Shown here piece after piece: positions 16,505 through 63,735 of a DNA stretch of 64,000 bases. The stretch comes from Haliotis rubra. Its lineage: Eukaryota. Below the pieces are notes generated by a model. That model did not search any database and was not told the DNA's origin. It saw only the letters and a list, made by a program, of their open reading frames with translations. The position numbers were made by a program, and so were the translations under genes. The first letter of the stretch is position 1, and every line of letters begins with the position of its first letter. The stretch lies in the NCBI RefSeq assembly GCF_003918875.1, contig NW_025767048.1, positions 868,001 through 932,000 on the forward strand. The letters are read 5' to 3'.

Positions 16505-17530
16505 TGAGGCCTTGAATGTTTTAACCTTCGATCAAACAACTTCTGAGCAAGAGTGGCATGACGCTCTTTGAAATCCTGATAAAAATAGCATCCTCGATTG
16601 TACCTCAAAAGTTGCGAAATGAAAACACCAAAGGCTGGAGCTGTTGGAATATTGCTCGACATGAAAGGGAAGATGAGTATTGGAAAGTTGAAATCATCCT
16701 GTTTTTCATACAGCTTTGTAGAGATATTTTGTCACTCTGAATCTTTATGCAAAGATCTAAATGTGAAACAGTTCAGGCGGTCTCACTTGTTTCCTTAATT
16801 GCACGTTCAGGTGGGTAAATCAGTGGAAGGTAATGGGCTATCTGATGGTTATTGAACGATATTGAATCATCGATGTATTGAAAGTTAAACTTCTTTGCCA
16901 AATTATCGTGTTTTGATTTTGCCAACACCAGCAAAAATTCTTATTCATATGCATAAAAGCAGTTCCGCAAGGAGGGGAGCACAATAGGTGCCCATGGGGG
17001 TGCCTATACGTCTTGGCGAAATGTTTTACCCCCACGTCACATTTCACAAAGATGTTATCAATGTGAAAGTCCAGCATTTCACATACTGTTTTCTCGGTAC
17101 ACTTCGAATGACATTTGCTTTCATTCTTGACAAATCGTCATGAACCTCTGAAAATAGACATGTAGGCATATCTTTGTTCACCACGTTTGTTTACAAAAGC
17201 CCCATGAATCAAGGAATGAAGTTTTTCCTAAAGTTTGTTATTTGGGATAGTAGTATACAATGTTGCAAAATGAAATGTTTTGACAGAACGGAACTCGGTC
17301 CGTTTCTGAGATTCTAAAAATGTAAGCAAATCTTTTGAGTTTTTGAGAAACGACATGGCATTAATTCCGCTTGTCTCAAAAATGTTCTGTGAATATCGAG
17401 AAAGTCCTTCCTTGATAGTATTAAAGATTATGGTTAATCTCTGAGACAGGGATCTGGTGGTACATTTGCTGGAACCAGCAATAAATCTCTTCTTGTATGG
17501 ATTGTGATAGAGTTCAAAAGAGGAATGGAC
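16505..17530 (-). mobile_element. Penelope-like retroelement RT remnant
   Basis: MLDFHIDNIFV, GTPMGTYCAPLLA and FQYIDD motifs on the minus strand with frameshifts. Confidence 0.75.
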
Positions 17531-19129
17531 ATGTCTTCAGGATTTAGAGTCTTTTAACCAAGATCTCAAAGAGTCGTGCGACCCTTCTCAGAAGTTACAA
17601 GAGCATAGTTGCAACATCCAAGGCATCAGATAAGCTTTCTAAACGTTTTATGGCATATTAGTCTAGATATGTGCAATTCAAACTTTGATGCATCAGTGAC
17701 GAAAGATGATGTCCGATGCAATTCCCGATTTGGACTTGTACCATACCTTCCCGAAGTGAACAATTGACTAGCGCTTGCATGCGTGCATGTCGTGTGTTCC
17801 ACTGTCCCTATTTGATGGTGATTAATAAACGCATGATCATCGTATCTCATGATGCCAGTCACTGGATTGTTTGGTCCAGATTAGATTTGTTTAGCGAGTC
17901 GGCCGTTAACAAAACACACAGATGCTCATAATATAGCCGGAACTGTATAATCGACTCTGCTTTTAATAAAGAATCCTTATTGATGTGGACAGGCTTTTGT
18001 AGATATAGATTATTAATATGGAGAGAAACCAGAAAAGAAAAGAAATTTAAATATTCAAATTAGATAGGTCCTGGTGAAGATGCATACAATCGTTTTTGGA
18101 AATATAAAAGATTTTTTTATCTTACATGTTTAAGTAAAGCGTATATTTTGTTATCTGGTATATCCTCTATTGCATTCCAACAGTATTGTACTGGGCGGAC
18201 GTCCTGGTTCAAACGATCACTAGCTTATCGGAATAATTAAATACTTTAAACGTCCTAAGTGATTTCATGTTGATATCAACATTGAAAAAAACCATCCTGT
18301 TCATGACAAAGTCACAATCTAATCAAGGTGTAATCTATCACTTTGAGAGCATGTTTGATAAAGTCGCTTGCTATTCTAAGATGTCTACAAGATCCATGCA
18401 GCTGAAAATAAGCACGTAACACCAGGAGAGTCAACATTCGAATCAGACCAACGGATCGAATGGACCAGTTCCAAAATCATTTTCTCCAGCTTACAATATA
18501 TATAATAAAAAGAATTAACAGAAGCTATCAACAAATTATACTTAACAAAATTAGTCATGGAACGTCATGAATGAGTTTTTCCAATAAAATGTTTACGCAA
18601 TCGTCGATTTGATACCCGGATGAAACACATTTATTTTCATTAAGTGTACACACTACTTCCATTGTTCGATTAAATTTAACAAGTGTCAAGTTTATACTTT
18701 GGTTAAGTATATGCAATTGTATTAAAGAAGTTAATTAGTTTTGACTGCGTTTTATAAGATTACAAATAAAGTGATATTGCAGCTTAAAGAAGCTTTGCTC
18801 TTCAAGAAAGAAATGGACAGTGATTACAGTCTTTCTACCTTGGGGATCGTATGTTTTACAATTCAACTTTATTCATCCTCGACTGGTCCTTGTCTACAAA
18901 TGTTACTAAATACAATACACGAACATATTCAGCGTGTAATGGGAAATCACTTCAATCAATCTTTCTCTGCATAAATGGCATTCATTCTGCTAAAAGGAAT
19001 AGGGGGTAGCCCATTTTGGGGGGATATTATTTTGGATCCAAATTGAATGATGGTTTATGGATTTATAAAATGATTATTCCATTCGCAACGTCTTATGAAT
19101 GGGCACACGTTGTTTTGGGATGAATCAAA

Positions 19130-34300: not shown

Positions 34301-37300
34301 CTAGTATATATACTGTATTTCAAAGACTAAGCGTTAGTCTACGTGAGAATCTACCTCCTCACCCCCTACCTCACTCACCAACTACCCCAACCCAGCCCCA
34401 CACTGGGGTGTCTACTTACAGGAGCACCTATGTTGCATGTGTCGTCAAGTATGTTCCCGGGAGTGTATGGTGGAGGACTAGGAGAACAGTCTGCCTTGTA
34501 TTTCTTGGGCCAAAGAGCGCTGCCGCTTCTCTTCACCTTGGTGCTGTCCGAATAAGATCATATGATCACATGAGATGTGGTTCAAGCTATTTCAATCCCT
34601 TATACAATACAAGCATACTCACGTGTAGTCCGCTTGTATAGTACTAGCATCTAATGCCAACATGTCATACTAGTATCTGATGCCCATATGTTATACTCTG
34701 TTGCAACCAAACGTAACATCAACATCCAGATTTTCCTACCCAAGCGAAAACGTTTAGACCTTTCGGTGATATCGTTCTCAGAGCTTCAAATGGCTGTGGG
34801 CGTGGATTCATGCCACAGATGTCTTTCTTACCTTATCAGCCTGCTAAAGGATGATAACAGCTTTGGTCATGACGGCAAGACATTTAGCCTGATGCTAATG
34901 AAGTTCTTAATTACCCGACTTGTTTGTCAACATAGTACACACATATCGAAGATTTGCTAGTAATTGATTACCCTTTAACTTTGAAAGGCACCACAATCAC
35001 CACGATGATCAACACCAGAGCAGACAGTGTAGGAAGCACTATAACCAGTGCAGTGTTTGGGGAATCTGTAAACCAAGTAAAGTATATTCCGGTATTTCTT
35101 ACTACATGCTGGTTACACTTAAATTATATCAACTGACAGATAGACCACTGAATGAGATTTTATTCTCTCGGACTTTCATCAGTACTTGGAGAAAGATGAG
35201 CTATTTCTCGGGCTTACCATCTGCAGCAGAATCAGGAGGAGAATGGCCACCATCTTAAAGAAATAAACGTACAGTGAACTAAATTGGGTATATGTTTCTT
35301 TTTAGTAGCGTTAACATTAATATTATCTGAGAGGAAAGTCGTCAACCCTCTTGCTGCCTAAATTCATGTACTGCATATTCCATCAGTATGGCAGATTTTT
35401 ACAACTGTCTGCTCCATAACTCCCTTAAGTGGCTTTTAGAAGCTAGTATGATGAAGTGGAACTGACTGACTGACTGAGTTTAGTTTTACGCCGCTTTTAG
35501 CAATATTCCAGCAATATCACGGCGGGGGACACCAGAAATGGGCTTAACACATTGTGCCCATGTGTGGAATCGAACCCTGGTCTTCGGCGTGACGAGCCAA
35601 CGCTTTAACCACTAGGCTACCCCACCGCCCCGATGAAGTGGAACACTTTTTGTGGATAGACAACTTCTTTGTTTCAGTAGTAGCAACTACTACTGCAACA
35701 AAGAAGTTGTCTATCCATAAAAAGTGTTCCACTTTGTCTGCTCCATGTCTGTCGAATCCATGAATCCTTTGTAATTTCCTTTGAAATCTTGTCTTGTAAT
35801 GTTCATCAACCATCTGATATAATGAAAAGCCTGTCTCACAGAACTTACGTTTCTTGCCTGGAGTTAGTAAGTGAGAGTTGAACAGTCTTTAAGTTATATG
35901 ATATTGACGTAGGTCATAGATGTCACGAACACAGATACAAGTACATACACAGAACGCAAATACATGTAAGTACACAGAATACAGCTACATACTCACTGTC
36001 TGACCAAATACGGGATTCCAACCGAAGGATCCTACAAAGGAGCCTTGAACATACGGGACGGTGGGGTAGCCTACTGGTTAAAGCGTTCGCTCGTCACGCC
36101 GAAGACCCGGGTTCGATTCCCCACGTGGGTACAATGTGTTAAGCCAATTTCTGGTGTCCCCCGCCGTGATATTGCTGGAGTATTGCTAAAAGCGGCGTAA
36201 AACTAAACTCACTCACTAACTCGACCAATACCCCTTTCATAAACATATGTTTTTTACACATACCTGTACTGCAATCACTTGCAGATGTTGCTCCTAAACC
36301 TGGAGTTGTCGTTCCTGACGGACATAGGGTACATGCGACGCTGGCAGGACGGTCTTGGTAGGAACCTTTCCCGCACAGGACACACACGCTGTTGTCCTCT
36401 CTCGTCCCAGCAGGACATTCACCTATACAGTACAATATGTATACAACTACTCATTACTAGAATACTGCAGCATAAATCAGAGCATTCTACTTGATTTGCC
36501 CTCAGGTCGTAAGTATATGTTAGCTCAAGTAACAACATAATATAGAGAAATAACTGTTGTTGCTATTGTGCTAATTAACTTCTGAAGAGTGTCAGACTAC
36601 TTTTTGTTATGTACTCTGTCTATGCGTTGTAATAATTTTCCCCTGTGCCAATGGACAATATGTCAGTGATGACTGATTCTGACTGAGAATTATATGAGTA
36701 TACATGCAAAGGCCGTGTGGTAGATTTCGACTAAAAGACACCGGAAGTGTACATCGACGCCTACTCTTCAATCAAGTCTCGTCCTACCACAAAGCCCAGC
36801 AGCTTCTGTAGGCACAGTTCCAGGTGGGCAGTTGATGTGCACATCCGTGGTTCCACTGTTGGGATCCACCGTGTACGTCCTGCCTCCCAGGGTCACTGTG
36901 AATATCGTATTGCTGTTGTTGACCAGCTGCTGGGCGGATATCTCGAACGTGGACACATCAGTGAAGTATGTCTTCAGCTGCCCGGAACCTATAGCGTTAA
37001 AGAGTGAGTGAGTTTAGTTTTACGCCACACTCAGCAATGTTCCAGCTACATGGCGGCGGTCTGTAAATAATCGAGTGCACCAGACAATCCACTGATGAGT
37101 TGAAGAGACTTGGACAAGATGGACACATCAACATGTCAGGAGGGGAAAGGTTAATGCAGGTTTTGGATGGAACCACAATAGATCGGGCTAATATGGGGTT
37201 TGATCGACAATGATATGATACTGGCATGCCTGGGAGTCGATTGTCCATACCGATGCCATTACATAGACACTGGCATCTGGATTATATCAAGAAATATTAC

Positions 37301-40300
37301 ACAGCACGTGACGTTATTTCAGGGATTCTTCGTGTGGATTATATTAACTTGCTGATCTTAAACAGTTTGCATACTACTTACCTTTCTGCTGATTGTTTGC
37401 ACAAAGGATTCTATGATTCATTCTTTTTCTTTCGGACATATGAAGAGTTAGATGAAATAAGATGCAAATATTTGATAAAGGGAAAACATCCTTGAAGGCC
37501 ACTAATTTCCTATTATACATATTACATTTGCAACTGAAAGTGACAAAAGTCGGATTATTTACTTACGCGATTTATCTCTGAATACGAGCGATATGTTCAT
37601 GGGATTAAGACTGTCGGTGTTTGACGTCATCACAATGGCCACAGGGGCACCAGTGGAACGCTTTCTTCTGGTGGTGCCGGGACAGAATTCCACCCGAATC
37701 TGGCATGAGTTGTCCTTCGTGCAATTCAGAGTGTTTGTCTTGGCAAGGAGCTGTGTTGTCAGAGAGGACTTGGTTTGTTCACTGCTGTCACAGGCTAGAG
37801 ATGGGTACTCCATCTGGTGTTGGATGGTGAAGCCACGGGCACTTGATACAGCTAAACCGAACATAACAGTGAGTGAGTGAGTTTTGTTTTATGCGACTTT
37901 TAGCAATGTTCCAGCACTATCACGGCGGGGGACACCAGAGATGGGCTTCACACATTGTACTCATATGGGGAATCGAACCCGGGTCCCAACAAGCGAACGA
38001 TTTGACCACTAAGCTACCCCACCGTCCCCCGAACATTACAAGATGTCACGTAGGTATGTGATTCACGTTATTTAGATCCCTGATATTTAACACTACATTA
38101 TATTTGATATTTAACACAACATGCACATAGATTGAGGTATCTTTCGTAATTTCAACTATAATATTCCAGTATTACGTTTGCTTCGACAAATAATCGGATA
38201 CAGTAAAAATATATTATATTTTTTTCCAGTTTTAGAATCATGTAAGTCGTGTGATTAAGCATAAAAATGAAACAAATACTTTTAAAAGTAATTTTTAAAG
38301 TAATAGGTTAAAGTAAATGTTAAGGATGACTACTAATAGAATATTAAGGTAAATGTCGATGACTTGTTTACTATCTTTATGAATCCACGTGAATTTATAT
38401 GAACTTTAGTCTCCAACGACGGCTCCTCGACAACAATTTCGTTGAAGACTTGACAACCGACACAGACACCTTCACCGACACAGATAACTATCGATTAAGT
38501 CCTTATGAGCTACACACCAGAGCAGGCTGGCAGCCTTGCATGGGGGTTGTCCTCTGTTTGGTGGGTCCACATATAGTTGGTCTCCCTTCCACACTCGTAC
38601 AGCGGCAGCACCGGCTTGATGAACATCAGATCATCCCGACACGAGATGGAACACTGGATCAGGTCGGCAGTCGTGTTGCAGTGAGTCTGGACACCGTATG
38701 ACCTCGGCAGGTGACTACAAGCTGAAACGGCATTGCAACCTGTACCAGGGTATCAGTGATAAGGATCTTGTTTGCTATTTGCAATTTGATGTTTGAATTG
38801 TGTTAATGGCGCAGACCTAGAGCAAGAATGTGTAGAATATTATCCGTGGTCAGTGTAAGAAGCCCGGCCATTTTAGTCTCGTTATGTCGGTCAAAGTTTG
38901 AACTATTAAATGGTTATTAAAAAATATAAATATCCTGACCAAGAGTGTTTGGATAAACATGTTTACAATTCTAAACTGCTTCAGATGATATTTTAAGAAC
39001 ACTTTTATAAACAGTATGCAGTATTGAATTCTGAACTATGTTGAATGGGTTGTAGGATGGTTCCTTGAATGGGCGAGAGTTCAGAGAAGCAAGTTTAAAC
39101 TCTGTATGGAAGTATTTTGAAAATACCTGTGGCCGATTGAACGTTTATAGTCACTTTTTACCTGGACACTCATGTGCATTACAATTTTCGGACAAGGTGT
39201 CACTTCCTGCACACGGTCTTCCATCTGGGTCAGGTGAGGGACTGTTACACTTCCGGTTCCGGGTCATCACTCCTCCCCCACAGGTCACGCTACATTCACC
39301 CCAGTCGGACCATAAACTCCACCCACCGTTAACTTAAAACAGAAACAGACTGCAGGTTTATACATTATATAACTCATAAACTGGTTTCAGTGAAAATTGA
39401 CTTCACGTCACACATATTATATCACATATTAACACCTATTTACTAAGCAACTATTAATTTGGTGGATTGTTATATTTGAAATTACATGAAAACGTAGAAC
39501 GTGTCCAAGAAAGGTTCTAAGAAAGATTGCATTGCAAAAAGTACTGAAGAGTAATAATTATCCGGAAAGAACATATGAATAGGCTATTAAAATGTTGTGA
39601 AAAACATTTATGAAAATAATAATAGTAACTCTTTTCAGTTTTTGTGGTGAGAACATATCTCCCCACCTATAACCTCTTCACATAGTTGTCCCCGGTACCC
39701 CTGTCCGCAGACGCATGTGTATTTGGAGTAGTTGTTGACACACCTGGCCCCGTGTTGACAGCTGTGATGTCGACAGTGGTCAGGAGCTACCTCACACTGT
39801 CGTCCAGAGTACCCATGTGCACAGTCACACCTGTACCTGCCCACCTCGTTCACACAGGTGTGGTTGCCACAAGGACTCGACAGACATTCATTAATAGCTG
39901 CAAAAAGAAAGATTACTCATCACAATCTTCACTTTGATTGATATTAGGATTTTGTGTCATACTCTTGTGTATCAGACTGATGTATTTCCCAGGCGAACGA
40001 GCACGGAATAGTTGGAATATTTTTTGCAAGGCGTTTGGAAGGACTCAAAATCAAAATCATTTTAAACTGCCATTGCAACTGTGTGTTTTTTCAATCAGTT
40101 GGGAGTTGAGGGTATCAAAAATGGGACATCATATGCAATAATTTGCAATTGTTCTCTTACAATCACAAGTGCTGGGTACAATTAATCCCTCGGCGTTGGC
40201 CTCCATGGAAGAGTCGCGTACATGAACGCCACACCCGGAACTGACCTCCCCCACCTCACCTCCGGTCAAAATCCGTCCAACAATGTTGAGGCTACTGATG

Positions 40301-43300: not shown

Positions 43301-46300
43301 TCTATGCATAATGTTTTAGGAGTACATGTGTTGATGAAATGTGAAAAAATATAATTTAACTGTTCTGCACTTGAGTAGCATGTTCTTATCAAAACGTTTT
43401 TTCAAACATCAGTGGACTGACTACAAGACGGAAAATTGCCTTCATGAAAGCCTATTCTGCAAATCTAGAAACTAGTTGGAACTGGAATTTCAATCAGTAT
43501 TCCAATATTGCACAATAAAACACTAAACACTTACCACACGAAGCAGTGCGATAATTTGCTATCATGCCCTTCCCACAGAGAAAATTTGGAATGCCAGGAG
43601 CAAAGGAATCATCCTGCAGTTCTAGCCCTGGAACTCCAACATCGAGGCTTTTAGACTGAACAGCATTATCTATTGCAGCCTTGATTCTGTCGAATGAAGC
43701 TTCGCATGACTTGACGGTAACGCTGGAGTTTTGCCCGTTCTCTCTGTATGGCAATATGACGTTAAATTCAACTCTGACGTTGACTTTGGCGGCACGTTTA
43801 CGGCGAGATGTTTTACCGCATTTCACGCTGACGAACTCGGCCCTGCAGTCTGGGACAGTTCCACCACATTCTTCCTTGAACAAAGGATTGGCCTTGAGCA
43901 TCTTGATGAAGTTCTCCCTAATCTGTTGGTTTGCTGTGGCATCAGGACAGTTACCACTGTAGTAATACAGCTCGGATGGCATCATCATGGATCCAGGGCG
44001 TCGCTTCACTAATGAAATCATACATGGTCTTATCAGGTATTTATCCATGAATTACTTAATATATCGGAACAATTAAATTGTTTTATTTCACTCTGCTGTC
44101 GACACTTCATACCGGATCTAATGCCCCAAGACCATGATAGTTTTTGGAGTTTTTCTGTAATCTCACGTCACTCATTCCTACGTCAATCATGAATTCAATG
44201 ATTAATTGAAGAATTAAAAAGTTGGAAAAATCCCTTTGAACCAGATGCAGAAATTCCCTTTGAACCAGATGCAAAGGATATTAGTTATATATATTCTAAT
44301 CTTTACTCTCAGCAAGATAACACGATGAAGCACATGTTAACATACCAGTACAGTCCTGAATGTCGTCACTGGGGCGCCAAGTTCCGTCTGATTCTCCACA
44401 AACATACTGGGCGGGCACTTTTCTCGGCACATCGAACTTCTCATTACACTGCATCTGGCACATCTTCCCATGATTCCATCGATCACATGCTAGGGCGCCA
44501 TTCAAAGGTTGCCTGAGGTCCGGGCAGTTGTTGACTGACGGAAAACAAGCAGTGAAGGGACTAATTCAACAAACAATTGAAAACCAGATGCAGGTCTAAC
44601 AATTTCAAGATACTGAAGCAGCTGGGAACTTATTTCCATAATTAACTGGTTGACCTCAACAATATCTACCTATTTTCAGCTTTGATCCCAATTTTTGTCT
44701 AGCGTGGCATGACTTCCAGATTTAGAGAGTCAATTTCGTACAACATAAAACAGAAATTTCCAAGTCATATTTCCATGTGTTGTAAAGTCATTTAAACCAC
44801 CGCTTTTTTCTACTCTTTGTCTGACAGTGGTGAACCCAAGAATCATTACAAATGGTTACTAATACTTCAACTAAATCAACTATGTCTGCTTCAGAGCAGC
44901 ACCCATTCTTATTAGAGATGATGAACTTGGATCGTTTCTGTTCAGGAGTCAGAAGACTTGGAACATGGCGATTTAAAGCCTTGATCAACATCAGTTTATC
45001 CCTGTCCCATGAGACAGGACTGCTGTATTGGATACGTGGTATATGGTGAGTTCTCGATCATCTTTAGTCAAAAATTGTATTTTATCAAAATGACATTTGA
45101 AGGAATTCGTAATGTTAGATTATTTTAAAGCCCCGCTATAATAACTCCATTGTCTTGAAGATGAAATGTCATCACCATCAGTCTGATTAGATTGTATTCA
45201 CATATACCCATTTCATCGGGTACCCAAAATGTTTGGACCTAGTAAACAACAAAATACCTCGACCTTCATTTCCAAACCATTGTATATCAGACAATCGCCA
45301 TGGACAATCATTGTGAGGTATAACACAAGGGTTTACCGGCTAACAGTATAATTACAACAAATACCTCTATTACTCACTTTTACAGTAGGGTTCAATAGTA
45401 TCAGCTGGCCATGTCCAGTGAACTCTTGGGGGCGTTCAGAACCAGGTCTTTCATCGCACAAAATCCTGCTTGAACCCTCCAATGGGTAGCCAGACTTGCA
45501 GGACATTGTGCAGGTGTCTCCATAGGTCATGCCATCAGAACATGAGTACAACAGAAGATCTCTTCCAGACTTGTCTAATTTGGGGTCGTCACAAACAAGA
45601 CCTGAAGTATAATGAAAAATTCACAATAATTTCTTTGGGTATTTCAAATTACATTGTGTTGTTGATTGGCAGTTAAGCATTTACATGCTCTGTGATAATC
45701 TATGATTTTACACCGTTTCCTACATTTGTTATTGGCGTATAATATTTCACGTCATGATACGGCAAAGATAGTGATGATGTGACATTTTTTATTCACTCAC
45801 TCACTCAAACTACTAGAATAAACTAGTAGGGGTAAATGATAAATGACTTTATGATAAATGTAAAAAAACATTTTCAAAAAAATTTCACATTTCCAAACAC
45901 ATGCTGAAACATCAACACGTTAGATCGAAATATGACCAAGAATGAAACCCCTCTTTGAATAATCAAATTAGATCCTTGTGGGAAAAGCAATTATGTCTTA
46001 ATCCATGTTCCTAAGAATGAACTATCATTTCGTTTATCAGGTATGCACTCACTTTGGATTTTAACTGTGAAGCTGCAAGATGCTGTGTTTCCGTCTTGAT
46101 CAGTAGCAACAACACGGACAGGAGTTCGACCAGGAGAGAAGACAGACCCGGAAGACGGAGTGCTCTTCACTGTTGGGGCTACTCCAGAGTTGTCCTTGGT
46201 TGCTGGGTCTGCCCAATGAACCATCCTTGCACCACCTTTTTTCTCAGCATACTTTTCAACGTCAAGGGGACAACCATCAACAAACTCTGGTGGTTTTGTA

Positions 46301-49300: not shown

Positions 49301-52300
49301 ACAGACATTCGCAGCTTTCGTGGACTTTAGGAAAACTTACGACTGTATAGATAGAAGTATTCTATGGAAAACGTTGCAGAATATTGGAATTGAAGGGAAA
49401 ATGTCTAATGCCACCGTTTCGCTTTACCATAATGTAAAGTCATACGTGCGGATAAGCGGGTCAAGTACGCCCTGGTTTCGGGTCAACAGTGATCTACGTC
49501 AAAGATGTCTGCTTTTTCACTCCTACTATTCAACCTGTACATCAACAACCTGATATCAACCCTAACGCCTCTGACATCGGCATACCTGTTGACGACAAGA
49601 GCATAAGCGTCCTAGCCTACGCCGATGATATCATTCTACTGGCCTTGATCGAAGTTGACGTGAATACACTTCTAGAGGGACTCAGTCAGTGGTGCCAGGT
49701 AAACAAGATGTCTGTCAACCCAGAGAACACAAAGGTCATACATTTTAGAAGCCAAGCAGTAGAAAGAACAGATGTGATATTTCAGTGTTGAGACAAGATC
49801 TTAGAGATAGTATAAAGCTACAATTACCTCGGCCTGCTCTTGACAGAGCATATGAACTACACCCGGATGGGAAATGCAGTGGTAGGTGCAGCAAGCAGGG
49901 CATTAGGACTCCTCATATCAAAGTGTAAAATCCTAGGAGGCATGCAGCACAAGACTTTCACCATGCTTTACGACTCCATGGTATGGGCTACTATCGACTA
50001 CGGTGCTGCAATATGGGGAACTTATCATATCCCAGCCATAAACGTTGTTCACAACCGAACTATGACGTACTAATGGGCGTGAGGAAGTTTACGCCGAAGA
50101 GTGCTGTATCAGGTGATATGGGATGGGTGCCACCGGTTGTCCGGCGATGGAAGAGTGTTGCTCGATTTTACAAGCGATCATGCGATCAGAACCCGAACAG
50201 ATTATCTTCTAATGTGTTCAAATGGGCCCATTCTAAGTCTGTGCCTAGTAAGCGGAACTGGCATCAACGTGTACACAGGAAATTTAGAAGTTTAGATCTT
50301 GAACATTTTATCCCAATTGGAAATACGTTTAACATACGCTTTTTAATATCAGAGTTTGAACAGAAAGTGATGCAAAACTTTTTACAGGAGTGGAGTGTTG
50401 CAGTCAATCAGGAGAACAGTAACCGGTCAGGACGGGAAGAAAAGTTGCGACTGTATGGTAACAGTCCTATGGAGTTGAGCCGCATCTACAGAGTGACCTC
50501 CCTTGGTCGTATCGCCGAGCACTGGCAATGATCCGCTTTGGAGTCGCCCCGCTACGTGTTGAGACAGAACGATACACCAACATGACCCTGAACCAACGTG
50601 TGTGTTTTAATTGTAATGAGTGCGTTGAGGGTGAATGTCATGTTTTGTTCCAATGCCTACTTTATTTTGAGGTTACAAACAGTCTTTTAGTCAAATATGA
50701 AGAAATATGTTATAATTTTAAATGTTTGAGTATCATGTCCGAGGTTGAGATGTTTTATTTAGCAGCCAAAACCTGAAATATTTTATTGGAAAAACGGCAA
50801 GGTATTTTATGTCATTGTGGGTAGTCCTTTTTCTAAGAGTTTTTATATATAAAGTTGGATTTGGAAGCATATTTTAATACTGCAGATGTGAATTGTGAAC
50901 ATTGTCCCTCAAGGAATCAAAAGGATTTTTGACTCAATATCCTTATCTACACCAATGTCATCTATTGTATAAACTTTGCACTTTATTATGCACTTTGAAT
51001 ACGACTATCGTTTATCACGTCTTCTGCCTACCCTTTGCTGCCATCTTCTGGATCTGTAGCAGTAGGTGGAGACCAAGTCACATGTGCTGTCGTCGCACCT
51101 GTCTCTGCTGTCACATCACTCACTCGTGGACACGTGATCGTTGGAGGTGTGTTTGGCGGGGAGCTCTCTGTCGTGAAACATCGTAACTGATAATATGGAC
51201 ATGTTTGTTGTTTTCTTTAAGTTGGGGGCTTGTGATTTCGTTAAAAACCCTGTATGTCAGAATACTGACATAGAGAAAGACCGCATGTGGACAGTGGTAC
51301 ATTCTGTTCATATAATGTTAACTAAATGACACAAAACATGCAATTCTTTTACAGAGATCTAGAAACAGTGTATATACGTTTACAAATCGGCACAATATCT
51401 AAATATTGAGATTAAAACGAACAAAACCTTCAGAATATAATTATCAGGATCTTACTTTCGCAAACAAACATGCAGACGGCTTGTGCTATTCCTGTAATTA
51501 GTCCAGTTACTGCCCCCATTATTGGCGCTACATACTGGATTTGACGTTTGTGTCTGGTTATAGCATTGTGTTTCAGGTCGTCGTGTGCTGAAATAATGTA
51601 TCACACGGTCATTATTACCATGCAAACTCAACAATATGGCAACCAGGCATATTATTTGTGTGTGATAATACATGTATAATTACTCTTTTTGTCTCAACAT
51701 TCTATTTAGTCAGTTTGTATTTCTTATTAACGTTCAGTTACGAAAATGAATCACCGTGTGTCCACGTGGTATCTTCGTTACATAGCATGACTCGCATGGT
51801 TCCTGGAAATCTACATTTGGTTCCTGGAAGAACACTCTTGGTAACGGAGTCGGTTTTAGGAAACACATCCTTGTCACAAGACCCATCAAACGACTCTGGC
51901 AAACTGCATCCAATATATGTAGCCTGTGTAATCAAAAGAAAACAAAAACGTCAAATTTAGCTTACCAAATTCTTTAGTGAAATCCTGGGACCATTTTCGC
52001 ATAAAGGCGGGACCGGTTAGACTATAAATAGATGAACGTTTGTATTTAAAAGTTTCATTAAGGTTAATCTACATTCATCGACTATCATAACTGCTCTGTT
52101 TAGGTGCTTAAGAGATTATGAATCGTAATCTGAATAACAGGTTCAGAATATACAGCATATAAAACAATATTTTTATATACGTGCCAATTTCAGTTTAATG
52201 TTACACATCTGTGTTATTATGTAATGATTTCAAATATTCCCTTCGTGAGGTCAAATGGTAAGATGGAATGTATCATACCTGAGTGATATTTGTATGAATC

Positions 52301-52347
52301 AAGATGATCGCTATAGAGGCAGACAGGGAGGGCGATGTACCTATCAT
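31370..52347 (-). CDS. Gene D: SVEP1/uninflatable-like multidomain type-I membrane protein, about 1,520 aa, 27 exons, one apparent 1-bp frameshift
   Basis: Exons 52347-52279 (signal-like), 51923-51755 (CCP-like), 51587-51456 (RHKR peptide), 51167-51032 + 48082-47958 (HYR), 47697-47527, 46840-46664 (CCP), 46301-46053 (HYR), 45601-45378 (CCP, frameshift), 44534-44346 (CCP), 44008-43535 (SEA-like, RRKR), 42628-42467, 42054-41893 (GCC2/3), 41514-41322, 40821-40631, 40304-40161 (pentraxin/LamG), 39897-39667 (EGF x2), 39332-39162 (TSP1), 38721-38518 (CCP), 37851-37567, 36988-36788 (SEA-like, RRKR), 36422-36264 (GCC), 35253-35218, 35065-34972 (TM), 34840-34832 (9 bp), 34543-34420 (PPPY), 31459-31370 (terminal, tentative). 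Splice phases are all compatible once 1 nt is restored at 45428-45432. Confidence 0.85.
31940..32420 (+). mobile_element. Probable SINE with conserved core and (ATA)n tail
   Basis: B-box-like gggatcgagtcc, core cagtccacccagatgtgaatgggtacc, 3' aagcgccttgagcatg...ataataataat. Confidence 0.5.
32802..34306 (-). mobile_element. Tc1-family (DD34E) transposon, near-intact transposase split by one frameshift
   Basis: ORFs 34018-33575 (HTH, GRPR) and 33818-32982 (TDESRF, QQDNARPH, SPDLSLIEHVW); imperfect TIRs with TA flanks; in the last intron of D. Confidence 0.93.
35463..35631 (-). mobile_element. Full-length SINE family 1 with 13-bp TSD
   Basis: GATGAAGTGGAAC at 35450-35462 and 35632-35644. Confidence 0.92.
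35636..35734. repeat. Near-perfect 99-bp palindrome (48-bp arms, 3-nt loop, 2 mismatches)
   Basis: AAGTGGAACAC...CAGTAGTAG-CAA-CTACTACTG...GTGTTCCACTT. Confidence 0.92.
48800..50790 (+). mobile_element. Degenerate non-LTR retrotransposon (RT ORF2), antisense in a D intron
   Basis: SYRGITL, EQNGFRRGRST, FVDFRKTYD, LAYADD, and C-terminal LRVETERY..RVCFNC..ECHVLFQC; multiple stops and frameshifts. Confidence 0.9.
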
Positions 52348-53765
52348 GACAGCCCTGCAAACAGCAAGATCATGTAAGCAGAAAAAATCAGATAGTGAGT
52401 GAGTGAGTATGTGATTGAGTGATCGAGTGAGTGAGCGAGTGAGTAGGATTTTACTATAACGTCGGTTTACACTATAACAGTAACATATATTTATTATCGT
52501 ACATATAATACATCAAAATATCAATCGACATACGTACGAACCCTAAAATCATTCAAAAACACATAAACTTCTAAAACTTAGCTACCAATTACATTGCCTC
52601 GTGCCCTGCCCGCATATATATGTAAATGAACATGAAATTCATCCAAATTAGATCACATATTTTATGAAATATCATTGCTTTGAAAATATTAGCAGCAACA
52701 TGTACTAACCGTGTTCTTCGGTGACCATATGTGGTACGTGCGAGAACAGCGCAAATGTATACCTGTAAGATTTGACTGCTTGCCAGCTTTTAACAGGTAA
52801 CCTCCCACTGATTTGCATAACCGGTTTAGGAAACACCTGTGATAAGGTACAAGCAAAATCTGGCAGTCACTGAAGTTTTAACATGAAAGATTTTAGTCAC
52901 GGGCGTAATTAAACACATTCCTCCCACCGTGTGTATTTTAAGCAATGAAATAATGTAACGCCAATAAGGGTTAAGGCTCAACCACTTATGTTCCTACGTT
53001 CAAAGACAGTTATAAGTGTGAAACCTTGTTATACCGAATCCTGTTCATTCGAAACGGCCACCATTCGGAAGATTAGAGCTTGCAACACACACATGAATAT
53101 GTTAATTTAATTTGGGTTTGACTGTAAATGTACAGTTTATATATATTCATAACTAAAGTAACACAAATTCAATGGTTATTCCACAAATGCAAATTCTGCC
53201 TTCGCATGGCTGTGTAGAATTACACCTCTTCTATAATTCAAACAATAGCACGAAATCATTGTTTGATTCCAACGATATCAAAGAATGTATTCATGAACTA
53301 CTATCAAATAGTGGCACCCCTGCAGGGACAACCAAATCAAGTGTTCACGGGAACATATTACTATATATTGAACAAGTGAGTGAGTGTGAAACGGTGTAAA
53401 ACGTGAAAAGCTGTATTAAGGCCTTATATCAGTATTAAGGCCTTATAGCTGTATTGGGACCTTAAGACTGTAACCCTCATCAAACATCTCATGACAACGT
53501 ATGACGGTCTTTGGCCGCAAAAAGATTTGAGATCCGAGTGACATACAGATGTTTCATTGTGACTTTTGTAAAGGTGAAGTCAGTCTTTTGGTCTTACGTA
53601 CTTATGGGTCCTTGATCGTAACATACACATAGAGGGACAATGGACCAGCCTGTAATATCCCAGTGTAGCTTTGAAAGCTTGCCAACTCTTATCAGCTTGG
53701 TGTTTTGATTTTACGAGTTAGCACTACCAGTCTGCACAAACCAAGAGTTCATTGCAGGTGTAACC

Positions 53766-56700
53766 ATGCTGTGGTTGATCTTGATCGCCGTCATTCCTAT
53801 CACTACATGCCAGAGAGCCGACACATGGGACAGTTGTGGATGCTACTGGGAGACATGGCAGGCCTGGTCGAAGTGCTCCAGTAGATGTTATGGCAGACAG
53901 ATACGTGAGAGGAGGGGTGTTTGTTGACACCAGACCAGAATGTGGGACATTTGAATCCTGCGACAGAGGAAATGGGGGTTGGGACAGAAGAGACTGCAAC
54001 AAACACTGTGATGCAGGTCGCTACAATGGGCAAGGATGCTCCTGTCCTCTGGGAAGATATGGAGAATGCTGTGACAGCAGTAAGTATCACCTCATCTAAA
54101 CATGTAACACATACCCTCAAGAACAATGGCGCCTATACCAGGTAGCGAGCTTATGTTTTGTTTTGTTTTGCTTGTTGTTTAATTCCGCAATATTCCAGTT
54201 TTATGACGACAGTCTGTAACTAATCGAGTCAGACAATCCATAGGAATGCATCAAGTCAGCGATCCTGTTTACGTATGTTTCTAGTTGCTGCTCTTCTCAA
54301 AGCCTATCTATCTATCTGTCAAAAGTACAAAGGTACGAAAACTGCAATATAACAGAATTACATTCGTGCTGCGTAATGTTTGACTCGTTTTCTCTTTAGT
54401 AACGACCTGCGCCAGACCAGTGTCTATTCCATACGGAAACGTTCACGGGGGGAAGGTTCCAGTATAATGACGTCATCACCTACACGTGTGACACCAACTA
54501 TAACCTGACCGGTTCCTACGAGAGGACCTGCATGGTTAACGGAGGCTGGAGTCGTTCTACACCAAGATGTCTCTGTATGTATAGCATTAAGCTGTGTTAT
54601 ATTTAGAGAATAACCCAAGAGGTACCAGTGATGACAGGAAATATGTCCCTCGTGAAATTAATAAATGAATAAAAAATCATCTTGCAGTATCGTTCGATAT
54701 CATTTCCGGCTACACTTTTAGTGTACACCTTGCAAGTTCTATTTCACCATGTTTAGTCTCTTTCACATGTACACGCGAAAGGAATTTAGTGGATGTATTA
54801 TTCTCGTTCCACGTCCAGCAATGAATACGTCCACCTTGACCAGGTCATTGACGTTGATTGCAGTTAACTGGGTAGCCTTGTTTGTTTACAAAATACGGTT
54901 AGACATTTTTTTACTATAAAACACGTTGTTAAGTAAACGACGTCATATTGTTAATGACGTATGAAATGAAGCATTAAATAAGCATCAAAATCGAAAACCT
55001 GTATGTTTCTTGTTGATATTTTAAAATCTCGAATCACTGTGATTACATTATTATTATTATTATTAAATTAGTTCCGGCATCCAATAAAAATGTACAAATA
55101 TACGATCGACCAAACAACGTCGAGAATCAATAAATTGCACATTGTGCAACTATCAAAAAGATATTACACGGGGTCTCCTCGCCCGTTTGGGTAATAAATG
55201 AAAATAATCATGATTGCTGCATTTAATTATAGCTGTGATGAAGGTTTGTTGTTTAACGCCACATTCAGCAATATTCAAGCTATATGACGGCGGTGTGTAA
55301 ATAATCTGGACCAGACAACCCAGTGATCAATAGCATGAGCATCATTATACACAATTGGGATACAATGACATGTTTCAACCACCCGATCTCGTTAGTCGCC
55401 TTTTACGACAAACATGGCCCGGGTTGCTGAAGACCAGTTCTAATCTAATCTTAACGAGTCGAAGCTTTTACATGTAGGTATGGATGACATGCACTCAACA
55501 AAACTACGATTCCTGAAACCCGGATACATACAAGATCTTGGTTTAGCTGGGACTTGTTGGAATCCGGAATCTCTGCCGTTGAAGTGCATTGACTTGCATT
55601 GTGTTGTTATCCTTCATGATATTGTAATGTTCCTGTAGTCGAGACATTTTATCAGCATTTTCTGAAGTGTATGCATTTCTTCATATCTGATATAATGCAC
55701 CTCTCACATATGCCCTGTTCTGTTTCCAGTCGCCGAGTCGTGTAGGAGCGGCCCGTGTCAGAATGGCGGCACATGTGTGGATGGTCTGGCCAGGTACGAC
55801 TGTGTCTGTGGAAGCGGCTGGACTGGGAAAAACTGTGATGTGGGTAAGTAGGTTTAAGAAACAGACTGCTATTCCACAAAAACTGCATAAGCATTAGCAT
55901 TGAAACCATACTCGTTAACACAGGTAAACTGCCTTTAGCATAATTGCTAATGTTCGTTTCAGATGTGCAAGCTCCAGTGGTTGACCAGTGTCCTTCTAGT
56001 GTCCGTTTGACTACTTCATCTCGTGAGATGACCTACACATGGACAGTTCCTGTCTTCTCTGATCCCCATGGCAACCCCGTGAAAACGTCCTCTGATTATG
56101 ATAGCAACAATTTTACTTTCCCCTGGGGAGACTTCACCGTCCTCTACACTGCAGTGAAACCCAGCAACGGCCTTGAGACGAACTGCAGCTTTACAATCAG
56201 TGTCAGACGTAAGGCCGCTTGTTGAATTGGTCATAGATGTATCACGCCGAAGACCTGGGTTCGATTCCCAACATGGGTAAAATATGTGAAGCCCATTTCT
56301 GGTGTCCCCCGCCGTGATATTACTGGACTATTGCTTAAAGCGGCGTAAAACTAATTCACTGATCTTGCAACAGAAAGTAACAATAGTCTGATATTAAGTG
56401 ATCTGTCCTGACAGCCAACAGTGATAATTGTATCAATGTAATTATTATTTCAATGTCTTCGATCTTTCTTATCTTTTCTTTTCATGGGATACATATACAA
56501 CGTATGTATTTATGTTCCGGGTACAGCCAAACCGTGTCCACCCATCGTTGCCCCGAGCGACGGTTACGTCCTGTGTAACGGATGGAGAGCAGACTATGGG
56601 CAGTACTGTCTCGTTGGATGCAACGCGAACTACTCTCTCCCACGCAGTTTTGACGCGAGACAGTGGCTAGTGTGTGGCGCAAGTGGACACTGGGCTCCAG

Positions 56701-57242
56701 ATTTGTTTCCACTACGATGCAAAGGTGAGTGACACGAATTGTATATTCTCGTCAGTCACATTTTATTAAACACACAAGAATATTTTAAATTACCACAGTG
56801 ACTTACCATATAGTTTACAATGTTATATGTCCAGGATTAGAATCACAATACGCCTTATATGTAGTATGATTTTACGCCGTTTTAACCATATTCCATCAGA
56901 ATCATGGCGGGGGTCACCAGAAATGGGCTTCACACATTGCACCCATATGGGGATTCGAACCCGGGTCTTCGAGCGAACACTTTAATCGCTGGGCTGCTGC
57001 CACGTTAATGATATTAGCAGATTGTGTTCTATTCATACATGCATTATGATTGCTTCTTATTTTTCACAGTCGGAGATGCAGGTGGCCATGTGGTGTTGAC
57101 GCCTGGAGACTGTCTCAGCGGGACTCACAAGCAAAAGGAAGACTTCATCCATGCTCTCAAACGGTCGCCTTTCAACTCTGTGTGCATTGACAACCCTACT
57201 ATCTGCTCCCCTGACAATGTCAATGTTGTATGCGGGGCATAG
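53766..57242 (+). CDS. Gene C: secreted signal-TSP1-EGF-like / CCP / EGF / HYR / CCP / half SEA-like protein (about 405 aa if two +1 G frameshifts are errors, otherwise a pseudogene)
   Basis: Exons 53766-54079, 54400-54574, 55730-55843, 55963-56208, 56527-56724, 57070-57242. Exons 1 and 2 are each 1 nt longer than in A, from an extra G at 53914-53917 and 54447-54452. Confidence 0.75.
54600..55197. mobile_element. About 600-bp insertion unique to a C intron, probable non-autonomous transposon
   Basis: Absent from homologous A and B introns; weak inverted ends (atttag..aataaccc / gggtaataaat). Confidence 0.5.
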
Positions 57243-62927: not shown

Positions 62928-63735
62928 TCATGCCCGTGGCACCCTGACGTGAATCCTCCCTTGGAGTCTTGCAACTTAAACAACGGTACTGTCGTGTTAT
63001 CTCACAACAAGACACAGATACTGGAGCCAGGCACTCAGTGTGATGTAGTTTGCCAGACTTCCGGAGAACCAGGAACTGCGACCTGTGTGGATGGAAAATG
63101 GGACATAGCATGTCAGAGAGGTAAGAACCAAAGGGTTAAGATTAAATATCCGTTAACGAAATAGTCAGATATATAGAAGCCAACACATGATTACATAGCT
63201 TACAATTCATAGACCATACAACGTTAACTTTGTTTTATTTGAGTAAGGGGAACTGATTAGTTGAGCATATACATTGTTTATATGTGCGAGATTGTTAGCA
63301 AAGTGTTTTTAATCAGGAACACAATGCACGGTAGACATCAGTACCTGCATGATCATGAGCCTCCAGACTTGTTCGTTACAAAGGAACTTATTGGTTCAAA
63401 TACCGCTAAGAAGTCAAAGGTATAGGTTTCTAATATCGGTAATACACCTGAGTATATTTGAAACTTGACTGTTTGTTTAGTGGAACAATCACTGGTTTAG
63501 ATCATGATGTGAGTATAACTGAAAAATTATCTTTACGCCAGTTTGGCAGTTCCTGATTTTTCTCCCGGTGTAGATGCCTCACCATACTGTACATTTTCTA
63601 AAGTCTTTTATCGTTGTGTAGGTGTGACAAGCACATTTTTGCAGAAGGAAAACGCGCAGAGAGAGAAACGCTTTCTTGGAATATTCGTAGCGGTAGCAAT
63701 TGGATGCATGATATTTTGCCACCATCGACCAAGAG
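62928..63735 (+). CDS. Gene E: 5' exons of another large SVEP1-like paralog, continuing beyond the window
   Basis: Exon 62928-63120 (CCP-like, phase 0-1) and exon 63622-63735 (REKR-FLGIFVAVAIGCMIFC, phase 1-1) match D exons 2-3 in order and phase; start/signal exon not identified. Confidence 0.7.

What the first reader, a model, noticed from the sequence alone, without database searches (positions are those of the whole stretch)
51456..51587. Furin site followed by a hydrophobic Gly/Ala-rich peptide and CxxxC near the N-terminus of D
Seen in a frame the ORF track misses: RHKR|QIQYVAPIMGAVTGLITGIAQAVCMFVC, on its own symmetric phase-1 exon. Established: RxKR is the furin consensus, and cleavage exposing a hydrophobic N-terminus is how class I viral fusion peptides and the big-defensin N-terminal domain are unmasked. 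Inference: a proteolytically exposed membrane-inserting tip on a long tethered stalk, with a possible role in fusion, adhesion or microbial membrane attack.
Basis: partly seen in the sequence, partly recalled or inferred. Interest (0 to 1): 0.75.

Follow-up and report, generated by a model that had tools for sequence, protein, structure and literature searches.

The report
Furin site before hydrophobic glycine-zipper tip
A real exon of a large abalone cell-surface protein encodes a conserved protease-cutting site followed directly by a greasy glycine-rich helix, a layout like the membrane-piercing tips of viral fusion proteins, found here across a mollusc gene family whose function has not been tested.

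Summary
Window 51456-51587 (minus strand) is exon 3 of Haliotis rubra LOC124285952 (XP_046578196.1, 1524 aa). The exon is phase 1-1 with AG/GT borders. No RNA run could be listed.

The motif is a family trait, not chance. RHKR is followed by a 28-residue Gly/Ala/Thr-rich hydrophobic stretch ending in CMFVC, then a Pro linker and the first HYR domain. The same module, [RK]x[KR]R + hydrophobic tip + CxxxC, precedes the first HYR in three Haliotis paralogue groups, other gastropods and bivalves. This includes paralogue E in this window and two uninterrupted transcript-like contigs.

A true signal peptide lies upstream, so the stretch is not a signal peptide. It is too weakly hydrophobic for a membrane anchor. 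Its glycines recur at i,i+4 (28 pairs against 10 expected). AlphaFold does not pack it against a domain.

Best reading (about 45%): furin-type cleavage frees a glycine-zipper helix as the new N-terminus of a membrane-tethered stalk, which then inserts into membranes or self-associates. It is not a class I fusion protein, since no heptad repeats were seen, and not a big defensin. Cleavage and membrane activity are untested.

The scan noted related modules elsewhere in this genome (s1-339797, s1-323649).

The parts
52279..52347 (-). Exon 1 coding part of gene D (LOC124285952): ATG and signal peptide MIGTSPSLSASIAIILIHTNITQ. Phase 0 end, donor GTatga.
   Evidence: The spliced translation equals the XP_046578196.1 N-terminus. 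It aligns with the signal peptide of the H. rufescens orthologue.
51755..51923 (-). Exon 2: a four-cysteine, beta-rich cap domain (residues 24-79). It is sushi-like in Cys/Trp spacing but has no Pfam hit. Phase 0 to 1, donor ACG|GTgatt.
   Evidence: AlphaFold pLDDT is 57-76 with short strands. Pfam gives no hit.
51456..51587 (-). Exon 3, the finding: 132 nt, phase 1-1, residues 80-124. It holds a linker, RHKR, the hydrophobic tip and CMFVC.
   Evidence: Conserved in H. rufescens DNA with splice sites kept.
51544..51555 (-). RHKR (residues 91-94), a furin-type R-x-K-R motif; the predicted cut is after R94.
   Evidence: The motif is kept at this place across the family.
51460..51543 (-). Hydrophobic tip Q95-C122 (QIQYVAPIMGAVTGLITGIAQAVCMFVC) with a GxxxGxxxG stripe, ending in CxxxC (51460-51474).
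   Evidence: The summed Hessa scale value is +2.3 kcal/mol, against -3.3 for the C-terminal anchor. Glycine i,i+4 pairs are enriched. It is 80-93% identical among three Haliotis orthologues.
51032..51167 (-). Exon 4: the Pro-rich linker SSPPNTPP and the first half of the first HYR domain. It starts in phase 1, which fixes the frame of exon 3.
   Evidence: Pfam HYR hit; splice and phase check.
43794..43805 (-). Second conserved RRKR (residues 620-623). It sits in the beta2-beta3 hairpin of a predicted SEA-like domain (residues 552-694).
37658..37669 (-). Third conserved RRKR (residues 1257-1260), in the membrane-proximal region.
34980..35048 (-). C-terminal transmembrane anchor of gene D (LVIVLPTLSALVLIIVVIVVPFK). 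The cytoplasmic tail exons follow at 34420-34542 and 31373-31459.
63622..63735 (+). The matching exon of paralogue E on the other strand: 114 nt, phase 1-1, with REKR (63660-63671) followed by FLGIFVAVAIGCMIFC.
   Evidence: It aligns with orthologues P0115 and P0136.

Best explanation
Window 51456-51587 (minus strand) is exon 3 of Haliotis rubra LOC124285952. This gene encodes a 1524-residue type I membrane mosaic protein. Its order of parts is: signal peptide, four-Cys cap, RHKR, hydrophobic tip, CxxxC, HYR and sushi modules, a SEA-like domain, ephrin-receptor-like repeats, a laminin-G-like domain, EGF, TSP1, a membrane anchor, and a tail with a PPxY motif.

Shown here: Inferred, step by step:
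1. The signal peptide is removed in the ER.
2. A furin-type convertase cuts after R94 in the late secretory pathway.
3. The 71-residue cap (residues 24-94) is released or stays loosely bound.
4. The 28-residue helix Q95-C122 becomes the free N-terminus of a roughly 1430-residue stalk that is still anchored by its C-terminal helix.

The tip is too weakly hydrophobic to have stopped translocation, and it has a glycine/small-residue face (GxxxGxxxG). I propose that it buries itself by helix-helix association in a lipid bilayer, either the cell's own or that of a neighbouring cell or microbe. The adjacent CxxxC may lock neighbouring chains together.

It works like the tip of a primed viral fusion protein or the N-terminal glycine-zipper segment of VacA. 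It lacks the refolding machinery that would drive membrane fusion.
For: Exon and frame:
- The spliced window sequence is identical to XP_046578196.1 residues 1-168.
- Exon-versus-intron conservation and a 9-nt indel against H. rufescens support a coding exon.

Family-wide module:
- It is seen in three Haliotis paralogue groups, in Littorina, Babylonia, Gigantopelta and Crepidula, and in the bivalves Dreissena, Mizuhopecten, Solemya, Mya and Sinanodonta.
- [RK]x[KR]R is present in 27 of 38 N-termini examined.
- P0128 has only three such motifs, all at positions conserved in the family.
- Homologues on uninterrupted Logan contigs (L002, 4931 nt; L003) carry the module. These look like spliced transcripts.
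- In P0051, one of these, the part before the cut is only a short acidic propeptide. This fits a pro-region that masks the tip.

Properties of the tip:
- It is 80-93% identical among orthologues, while the linker before RHKR is 33-50%.
- Summed Hessa values are 0 to +4 for the tips against -1.4 to -3.4 for the C-terminal anchors.
- Glycine i,i+4 pairs number 28 against 10.1 expected (z 6.6). Small residues are also enriched at i+3 and i+7, which is a helical small-residue face.
- AlphaFold gives HYR a pLDDT of about 90. Residues 84-112 fall below 50 and are not packed on a domain.
- Other family tips are Trp-rich or cationic amphipathic (P0113, P0086, P0124). Both are also compositions that favour membrane interfaces.

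Published precedents:
- VacA's N-terminal hydrophobic GXXXG segment is required for channel formation (PMC4926140).
Against: - No RNA, proteomic or N-terminal data exist for this protein; no run could be listed, and no transcript-fragment proteins were found.
- Cleavage is inferred from the motif alone.
- Two hydrophobic-tip members lack RxKR (Mya P0068, Solemya P0075). Some members with RxKR have non-hydrophobic tips, such as P0120.
- For what is probably the same Dreissena gene (both proteins are recorded on contigs of identical length), the RefSeq model omits exactly this module and the GenBank model keeps it. The exon may therefore be optional.
- Tip length ranges from 15 to 42 residues, which argues against one fixed membrane geometry.
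- A Crepidula homologue was found in shell matrix (PMC9365450 supplement). That points to an extracellular-matrix setting rather than membrane attack.
- The AlphaFold alignment had only 15 sequences, so the low confidence is weak evidence.
- The 19 tips in the periodicity test are related sequences, not independent samples.
Confidence: 0.45

Rival explanations
1. The module is an N-terminal multimerisation or matrix-anchoring device with no membrane involved. After cleavage, the glycine-zipper helices of several chains bundle, or form beta-aggregates with hydrophobic matrix components. The CxxxC cysteines then form interchain disulfides, giving a bouquet of stalks in the pericellular or shell matrix.
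For: - CxxxC directly follows the helix and is nearly invariant (C122 invariant, C118 at least 90%). The cap (4 Cys) and the HYR domain (2 Cys) look internally paired, which leaves these two cysteines free for interchain bonds. This is my reading of the sequences.
- One E orthologue keeps only one of the two cysteines (P0136), so an obligatory intrachain pair is unlikely.
- The small-residue face implies helix-helix contact.
- The Crepidula homologue is a shell matrix protein.
- Big-defensin N-domains drive assembly (PMC6805989).
Against: - The helix has no polar face or heptad pattern that would keep a bundle soluble in water. The tips are nearly uncharged, with GRAVY 1.3-2.5.
- Members without any cysteine exist (P0113).
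- The cationic and Trp-rich variants do not look like oligomerisation domains.
Confidence: 0.22
2. The site is not cleaved, or cleavage is irrelevant. The hydrophobic stretch is a second, cis membrane attachment: an interfacial helix or re-entrant hairpin in the cell's own membrane. It holds the N-terminal end of the long ectodomain down on the surface.
For: - Scallop and Dreissena tips are 37-42 residues long with a central Gly-Pro. That length would be enough for a helical hairpin that returns to the same side; this is my inference, not a tested result.
- Scallop tips give sub-threshold Pfam hits to Gly-zipper_YMGG and C19orf12, both membrane glycine-zipper families.
- A hairpin keeps the topology consistent with extracellular HYR and sushi domains.
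Against: - D's tip (28 residues), E's (16) and P0051's (15) are too short for a hairpin.
- R-x-K-R is the best-conserved feature of the module, more so than hydrophobicity. A pure anchor would not need it.
- The Pfam hits are below the curated cut-offs (20.7 against 28.9 bits).
Confidence: 0.1
3. The stretch is a buried structural element of a folded cap-linker-HYR unit, and RHKR is an ordinary propeptide or surface loop with no link to the hydrophobic stretch.
For: - Hydrophobic segments can be core elements of a fold.
- The AlphaFold alignment was shallow (15 sequences), so failure to pack it is weak evidence.
Against: - The cap before the site is dispensable in some members. P0051 has only a roughly 30-residue acidic propeptide, and P0026 lacks the cap entirely.
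- Tip length varies from 15 to 42 residues.
- The tip is on its own symmetric exon, which one Dreissena model omits.
- AlphaFold predicts HYR confidently without it.
Confidence: 0.08
4. It is a gene-model artefact: the exon is not used in H. rubra transcripts, or it is read in the other open frame.
For: - No RNA run was listed.
- A second frame is open across the exon.
- One RefSeq model in Dreissena lacks the module.
Against:
- The exon is conserved above intron level with an in-frame indel.
- The peptide is conserved in three Haliotis species and in many paralogues.
- Transcript-like contigs of homologues include it.
Confidence: 0.03

Closest known systems
Class I viral fusion glycoproteins (HIV Env, paramyxovirus/pneumovirus F, influenza HA)
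   Same: They are type I membrane precursors with an N-terminal signal peptide and an N-terminal subunit. An R-x-K/R-R priming site is followed directly by a Gly/Ala-rich hydrophobic peptide, often starting with F, G or A. A C-terminal anchor completes the layout. Several family tips, such as REKR|FLGIF in E and KEKR|FLGFLLAAV in H. rufescens, recall viral fusion peptides; I make that comparison from memory and did not test it.
   Different: No heptad repeats or long helices follow the tip. HYR, sushi, SEA-like, EGF and TSP1 modules follow instead. A profile of the module finds no viral protein among solved structures. Trimerisation is unknown. So it resembles the tip only, not the fusion machine.
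Big defensins of molluscs, horseshoe crabs and amphioxus
   Same: They occur in marine invertebrates. The mature part begins with a hydrophobic domain that drives assembly on bacteria (PMC6805989).
   Different: Big defensins are small secreted peptides. Their N-domain has a beta-alpha-alpha-beta fold and is followed by a six-Cys beta-defensin domain. Here a single helix-like tip is followed by CxxxC and a 1400-residue tethered stalk. There is no sequence match.
N-terminal glycine-zipper segment of Helicobacter pylori VacA, and glycine-zipper membrane peptides in general
   Same: An uncharged hydrophobic segment sits at the mature N-terminus of a large protein. It has tandem GXXXG motifs that mediate helix association and channel formation (PMC4926140). 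The family tips show the same i,i+4 glycine spacing.
   Different: VacA is a bacterial secreted toxin and is unrelated in sequence and fold. No channel activity is known here. Pfam glycine-zipper models match only the scallop members, and below threshold.
SVEP1/Polydom, the name NCBI gives the relatives
   Same: It shares the module types HYR, Sushi, Ephrin_rec_like, EGF and a laminin-G/pentraxin-like domain.
   Different: D has no VWA domain and no long sushi array. It has a transmembrane anchor, SEA-like domains and TSP1. The furin-tip module is not, to my knowledge, a described SVEP1 feature. D is a mollusc-specific mosaic, not an SVEP1 orthologue.
SEA-domain and Notch-type cleaved surface proteins (for furin sites 2 and 3)
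   Same: A ferredoxin-like extracellular domain is cut in a strand-connecting loop, so that the halves can stay associated. The best structural matches are SEA domains: MUC16 SEA5 at Z 7.8, rmsd 3.5 over 110 residues, plus the TMPRSS and Gpr126 SEA domains.
   Different: The cut would be made by a convertase at RRKR rather than by autoproteolysis at G|SVVV. A Z below 8 lies in the range of common folds, so this is a resemblance, not proven membership.

Membership tests
Class I viral fusion protein | Type I membrane precursor with a priming cleavage site next to a hydrophobic fusion peptide | tested here: met
   Signal peptide, RHKR followed by a hydrophobic tip, and a C-terminal anchor are present. 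This is at motif level only; cleavage is not shown.
Class I viral fusion protein | Heptad repeats HR1 and HR2 that form a trimeric coiled coil and six-helix bundle after the fusion peptide | tested here: not met
   AlphaFold of residues 1-215 shows the beta-sandwich HYR right after the tip. Pfam finds only modular domains in residues 125-1420: HYR, Sushi, Ephrin_rec_like, Laminin_G_3, EGF and TSP_1. The gaps between them hold a predicted SEA-like domain and stretches that are sushi-like by my reading. No coiled-coil predictor was run.
Class I viral fusion protein | Detectable sequence or profile similarity to known fusion glycoproteins | tested here: not met
   The profile of the module searched against all PDB sequences gave a best E of 0.097, to a serine protease, and no viral protein.
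Big defensin | Hydrophobic N-terminal domain followed by a six-cysteine beta-defensin domain in a small secreted peptide | tested here: not met
   CxxxC and HYR follow the tip. There are no Pfam or PDB sequence hits.
Pfam glycine-zipper families (Gly-zipper_YMGG, Gly-zipper_Omp, C19orf12) | Score above the curated Pfam threshold | tested here: not met
   D and the Haliotis members give no hit. Scallop P0026 scores 20.7 bits against a cut-off of 28.9, and P0029 scores 15.7 bits.
Glycine-zipper helix (motif class, not a homologous family) | Gly or small residues repeated at i,i+4 along a hydrophobic helix | tested here: met
   D has G104, G108 and G112. Across 19 tips there are 28 Gly i,i+4 pairs against 10.1 in shuffles, z 6.6. 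The sequences are related, so the z-score overstates independence.
Furin/proprotein-convertase substrate | R-x-K/R-R motif in a luminal, accessible, conserved position | tested here: met
   RHKR lies downstream of a signal peptide, in a segment of low AlphaFold confidence, and is conserved across the family.
Furin/proprotein-convertase substrate | Actual cleavage in vivo | not testable with these tools
   No proteomic or N-terminal data are available here. The Crepidula shell proteome lists a homologue, but peptide positions were not available.
SVEP1/Polydom orthologue | VWA domain, pentraxin domain and a long sushi array | tested here: not met
   There is no VWA or Pentraxin Pfam hit. Laminin_G_3, six or so sushi or sushi-like units, TSP_1 and a membrane anchor are found instead.
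SEA domain (for the domain holding furin site 2) | Ferredoxin-like beta-alpha-beta-beta-alpha-beta fold with the cleavage site in the beta2-beta3 turn | tested here: inconclusive
   AlphaFold pLDDT is 82 and pTM 0.78 with that strand order, and RRKR sits at the beta2-beta3 turn. The top VIA matches are SEA domains, but Z is 7.8. Foldseek gives E of about 0.01, and Pfam SEA does not hit.

The most novel reading that the evidence does not exclude
Molluscs possess a previously undescribed family of cell-surface mosaic proteins that are made with a masked tip, which a convertase releases to become membrane-active. The tip has diversified between paralogues into glycine-zipper, Trp-rich and cationic antimicrobial-peptide-like forms. 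The proteins would act as tethered harpoons that insert into the membranes of microbes or neighbouring cells, for immune killing or agglutination or for cell-cell and cell-matrix anchoring. This would be a cellular, non-viral counterpart of the primed fusion-peptide principle.
Probability: 0.2. Interest if true: 0.8.

Novelty: new variant of a known kind. Interest (0 to 1): 0.6.

Why it matters
Convertase cleavage that exposes a hydrophobic N-terminus is the hallmark of viral class I fusion proteins and of a few host-defence peptides. It has not, as far as my literature searches show, been described as a conserved module of a large cellular surface protein family.

If the tip is cleaved and membrane-active, abalone and other molluscs would have a family of tethered membrane-inserting receptors or effectors. 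Their tips differ between paralogues but are conserved between species. That is relevant to innate immunity in aquaculture species, to cell-matrix anchoring during shell formation (a Crepidula homologue is in the shell matrix), and to how fusion-peptide-like elements arise outside viruses.

Even if the tip only serves multimerisation, the family shows a regular three-site convertase processing plan that can be tested. One of the sites lies in a SEA-like domain.

Tried and rejected
- My first guess was that the stretch is the signal peptide, starting at the in-exon ATG (51519, good Kozak context, AQA motif). I rejected it once the RefSeq protein and its orthologues showed a real signal peptide on an upstream exon, with the cap domain in between.
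- The other open frame of the exon (TRRPETQCYNQ...) was rejected because of exon phases and orthologue proteins.
- Search for RNA runs: none was listed, so read laying could not be used.
- A paralogous copy of the exon within the window was sought by blastn and tblastn; none was found. Paralogue E's exon is too diverged and was recognised only by pattern and through its orthologues.
- Word-based protein search with residues 60-200 of D, to find transcript fragments: nothing.
- Exact look-up of the third Haliotis orthologue's locus: not on record.
- Pfam on the exon and on nine family N-termini gave only sub-threshold hits.
- The PDB sequence profile search gave nothing significant.
- The ESM Atlas feature search of the module gave no usable hit.
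- Foldseek of the N-terminal model matched only Ig-like folds, through the HYR domain.
- Literature searches for a described family or module found nothing specific.
- I considered that the module was captured from a retroelement envelope gene. No homology supports this and it cannot be tested here, so I left it as unlikely.
Full report
**What is in the sequence.** The peptide is on the minus strand. The 132 nt from 51587 down to 51456 are bordered by a polypyrimidine tract plus CAG and by GTAAGA. Two frames are open. The next exon downstream, the first half of a Pfam HYR domain, starts in phase 1.

**Which gene.** I ran a profile-free search with a large downstream exon of the same gene (window 43497-44051). 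It returned a 1517-residue protein of Haliotis rufescens that maps collinearly on the minus strand from 52347 to 34423. A word search with its N-terminus then returned XP_046578196.1, "uncharacterized protein LOC124285952" of Haliotis rubra (P0128, 1524 aa). The window is therefore blacklip abalone DNA.

Splicing 52347-52279, 51923-51755, 51587-51456 and 51167-51032 gives a translation identical to residues 1-168 of that protein. The finding is exon 3, phase 1-1, covering residues 80-124. The coordinates are:
- RHKR: 51544-51555
- tip Q95-C122: 51460-51543
- CMFVC: 51460-51474

The coding region runs on to 31373.

**Is the exon real?** No RNA run could be listed for this DNA, and no transcript-fragment proteins were found. 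Support is therefore comparative.
- I aligned the region with the H. rufescens locus (L001). Exons 2, 3 and 4 are 81-84% identical, while the introns are 62-66% identical. The single indel in exon 3 is 9 nt, and both splice sites are kept.
- Among three Haliotis orthologues, the tip is 80-93% identical, as high as the HYR domain (80-86%). The linker before RHKR is only 33-50% identical.
- More distant homologues sit on Logan contigs of 4.9 and 7.2 kb with uninterrupted ORFs of 1445 and 1460 residues. These look like spliced transcripts, and they include the module.

I put the chance of a gene-model artefact at about 3%.

**My first idea was wrong.** An in-exon ATG with a good context would give MGAVTGLITGIAQAVCMFVC. 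That looks like a signal peptide, with AQA as a cleavage motif. However, the protein and all its orthologues have a separate signal peptide on exon 1 and a four-cysteine domain on exon 2, both ahead of this stretch. The stretch is therefore internal and lies on the luminal side.

**A family-wide module.** I built a small HMM of the first HYR domain and looked upstream of it in all proteins fetched.
- Of 38 N-termini examined, 27 have [RK]x[KR]R within 85 residues upstream of the first HYR domain. In most of these a hydrophobic segment ending in CxxxC follows it directly, then a Pro-rich linker.
- Members come from three Haliotis paralogue groups, including paralogue E of this window.
- E's exon is on the plus strand at 63622-63735. 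It is again phase 1-1 and reads REKR|FLGIFVAVAIGCMIFC.
- Other members come from Littorina, Babylonia, Gigantopelta and Crepidula, and from the bivalves Dreissena, Mizuhopecten, Solemya, Mya and Sinanodonta.
- Exceptions exist. Mya P0068 and Solemya P0075 have the hydrophobic tip without RxKR. P0120 has RSKR with a non-hydrophobic tip. P0113 has a Trp-rich tip without cysteines. Sinanodonta P0086 and Crepidula P0124 have Arg/Trp-rich cationic tips.
- An amphioxus relative has a hydrophobic stretch before HYR but neither RxKR nor CxxxC.
- In Dreissena, the GenBank model carries the module. A RefSeq model on a contig of the same recorded length, so probably the same chromosome, lacks exactly these residues. 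The module is therefore on its own symmetric exon there too, and it may be optional.

**Not chance.** P0128 contains only three R-x-[KR]-R motifs in 1524 residues, at positions 91, 620 and 1257. Each of the three positions carries such a motif in most of the gastropod and bivalve homologues listed; a few lack one of them, for example H. rufescens P0002 at the middle site. The amphioxus protein has none of them.

**Physical character of the tip.**
- On the Hessa biological scale, the best 19-residue window sums to +2.3 kcal/mol in D and 0 to +4 in relatives. The C-terminal anchors give -1.4 to -3.4. The tip should therefore pass the translocon rather than stop transfer. That is also the only topology consistent with disulfide-rich HYR, sushi, EGF and TSP1 domains downstream.
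- In 19 family tips, glycines recur at i,i+4 far more often than in shuffles: 28 pairs against 10.1, z 6.6. Small residues are also enriched at i+3 and i+7 but not at i+1, i+2 or i+5. This is the signature of a helix with a small-residue face, a glycine zipper. D has G104, G108 and G112. The sequences are related, so the z-score overstates independence.
- AlphaFold with the 15-sequence alignment A1 gives HYR a pLDDT of about 90 and the cap 57-76. Residues 84-112 fall below 50, as unpacked helices. This is weak evidence that the tip is not buried against a domain.
- Pfam gives only sub-threshold glycine-zipper hits, and only in scallop members.
- A profile of the module finds nothing among PDB sequences.

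**The rest of the protein.** Pfam finds HYR, Sushi, Ephrin_rec_like, Laminin_G_3, EGF and TSP_1. The region with no Pfam hit that holds the second RRKR (residues 552-694) was folded with a 49-sequence alignment and gave pLDDT 82 and pTM 0.78. The fold is beta-alpha-beta-beta-alpha-beta, with RRKR in the beta2-beta3 turn. The best structural matches are SEA domains: MUC16 SEA5 at Z 7.8, rmsd 3.5 over 110 residues, plus TMPRSS and Gpr126 SEA. These scores are in the range of common folds, so I call the domain SEA-like only.

A Crepidula fornicata homologue (UTK45904.1) is listed among shell matrix proteins with complete ORFs in the supplement of PMC9365450. At least one family member therefore reaches the extracellular matrix.

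**Mechanism.**
- Shown: a real, conserved exon encodes a furin-type motif followed directly by a conserved, weakly hydrophobic, glycine-zipper helix and CxxxC. It sits between a signal-peptide-led cap and a long membrane-anchored ectodomain.
- Inferred: a convertase cuts after R94, and the helix becomes the new N-terminus. It then buries itself by helix-helix association in a bilayer (best reading, about 45%) or in a disulfide-locked oligomer or matrix (about 22%).
- Lesser rivals: an uncleaved cis membrane hairpin (about 10%), a buried structural element (about 8%), and an artefact (about 3%).

The membrane reading is favoured because it also accounts for the Trp-rich and cationic amphipathic tips of other members, and because the helices lack a polar face. 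The shell-matrix finding and the conserved cysteines favour the assembly reading. The two readings are not exclusive.

**Comparison with known systems.** The layout resembles the primed tip of class I viral fusion proteins. The defining coiled-coil machinery was not seen and no sequence similarity was found, so D is not a member and is unlikely to be a fusogen on its own.

It resembles big defensins in that a hydrophobic N-terminal part drives assembly on bacteria (PMC6805989). That their precursors carry a dibasic site before it is from memory. It lacks their fold and their defensin domain.

The closest physical analogue is the N-terminal GXXXG segment of VacA, which is needed for channel formation (PMC4926140).

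The NCBI label "SVEP1-like" reflects shared module types only. There is no VWA domain, and D has a membrane anchor.

**Novelty and score.** The gene is annotated, but the module appears undescribed in the searchable literature. I rate it a new variant of a known kind: a convertase-primed hydrophobic tip in a cellular mosaic surface protein family. Interest is 0.6.

Noticed in passing
window 43794-43805 and 37658-37669 (minus): Gene D has exactly three R-x-[KR]-R motifs. The other two (RRKR at residues 620 and 1257) sit at positions where most of the gastropod and bivalve homologues listed also carry such a motif. This suggests a regular three-site convertase processing plan.
   Followed up: partly
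window 43527-44009 (minus), residues 552-694 of D: This region has no Pfam hit. With a 49-sequence alignment it folds (pLDDT 82) as a ferredoxin/SEA-like beta-alpha-beta-beta-alpha-beta domain, with RRKR in the beta2-beta3 turn where SEA domains autocleave. The best structural matches are MUC16, TMPRSS and Gpr126 SEA domains, with Z about 7-8.
   Followed up: partly
window 53700-57239 (plus): A separate plus-strand paralogue has a signal peptide, a TSP1-like part, sushi, EGF, HYR, sushi and half of the SEA-like domain. It ends with a stop right after ...NVNVVCGA, which is exactly where D has its second RRKR. A near-duplicate of this whole segment lies at about 12000-18500 on the minus strand.
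   Followed up: no
window 49983-50531 (plus) and 32985-34039 (minus): Transposon remains lie inside D's introns. There is a fragment resembling the tail of a retrotransposon reverse transcriptase between the two HYR half-exons, and a Tc1/mariner-like transposase ORF in the last intron. I identified both by eye from the translations only.
   Followed up: no
P0008 and P0009 (Dreissena polymorpha): The GenBank model KAH3713155.1 contains the furin-tip module. The RefSeq model XP_052249805.1, recorded on a contig of the same length, lacks exactly those residues. This is consistent with skipping of a symmetric exon or with an annotation difference.
   Followed up: partly
P0124 (Crepidula), P0086 (Sinanodonta), P0113 and P0153 (Haliotis): In some family members the segment after the furin site is not a glycine zipper. 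It is Arg/Trp-rich and cationic (GWFRVRIRVRLPRICIWSC) or Trp-rich (WLWIPILIIGWWG), both reminiscent of antimicrobial peptides. This matches the title of another note of this scan on a different piece of this genome (s1-323649).
   Followed up: partly
window 34420-34542 (minus) and 156-392 (minus): The cytoplasmic tails of D and of the gene at the start of the window share a conserved exon with a PPPY motif (SPSPPPYTPG in D).
   Followed up: no
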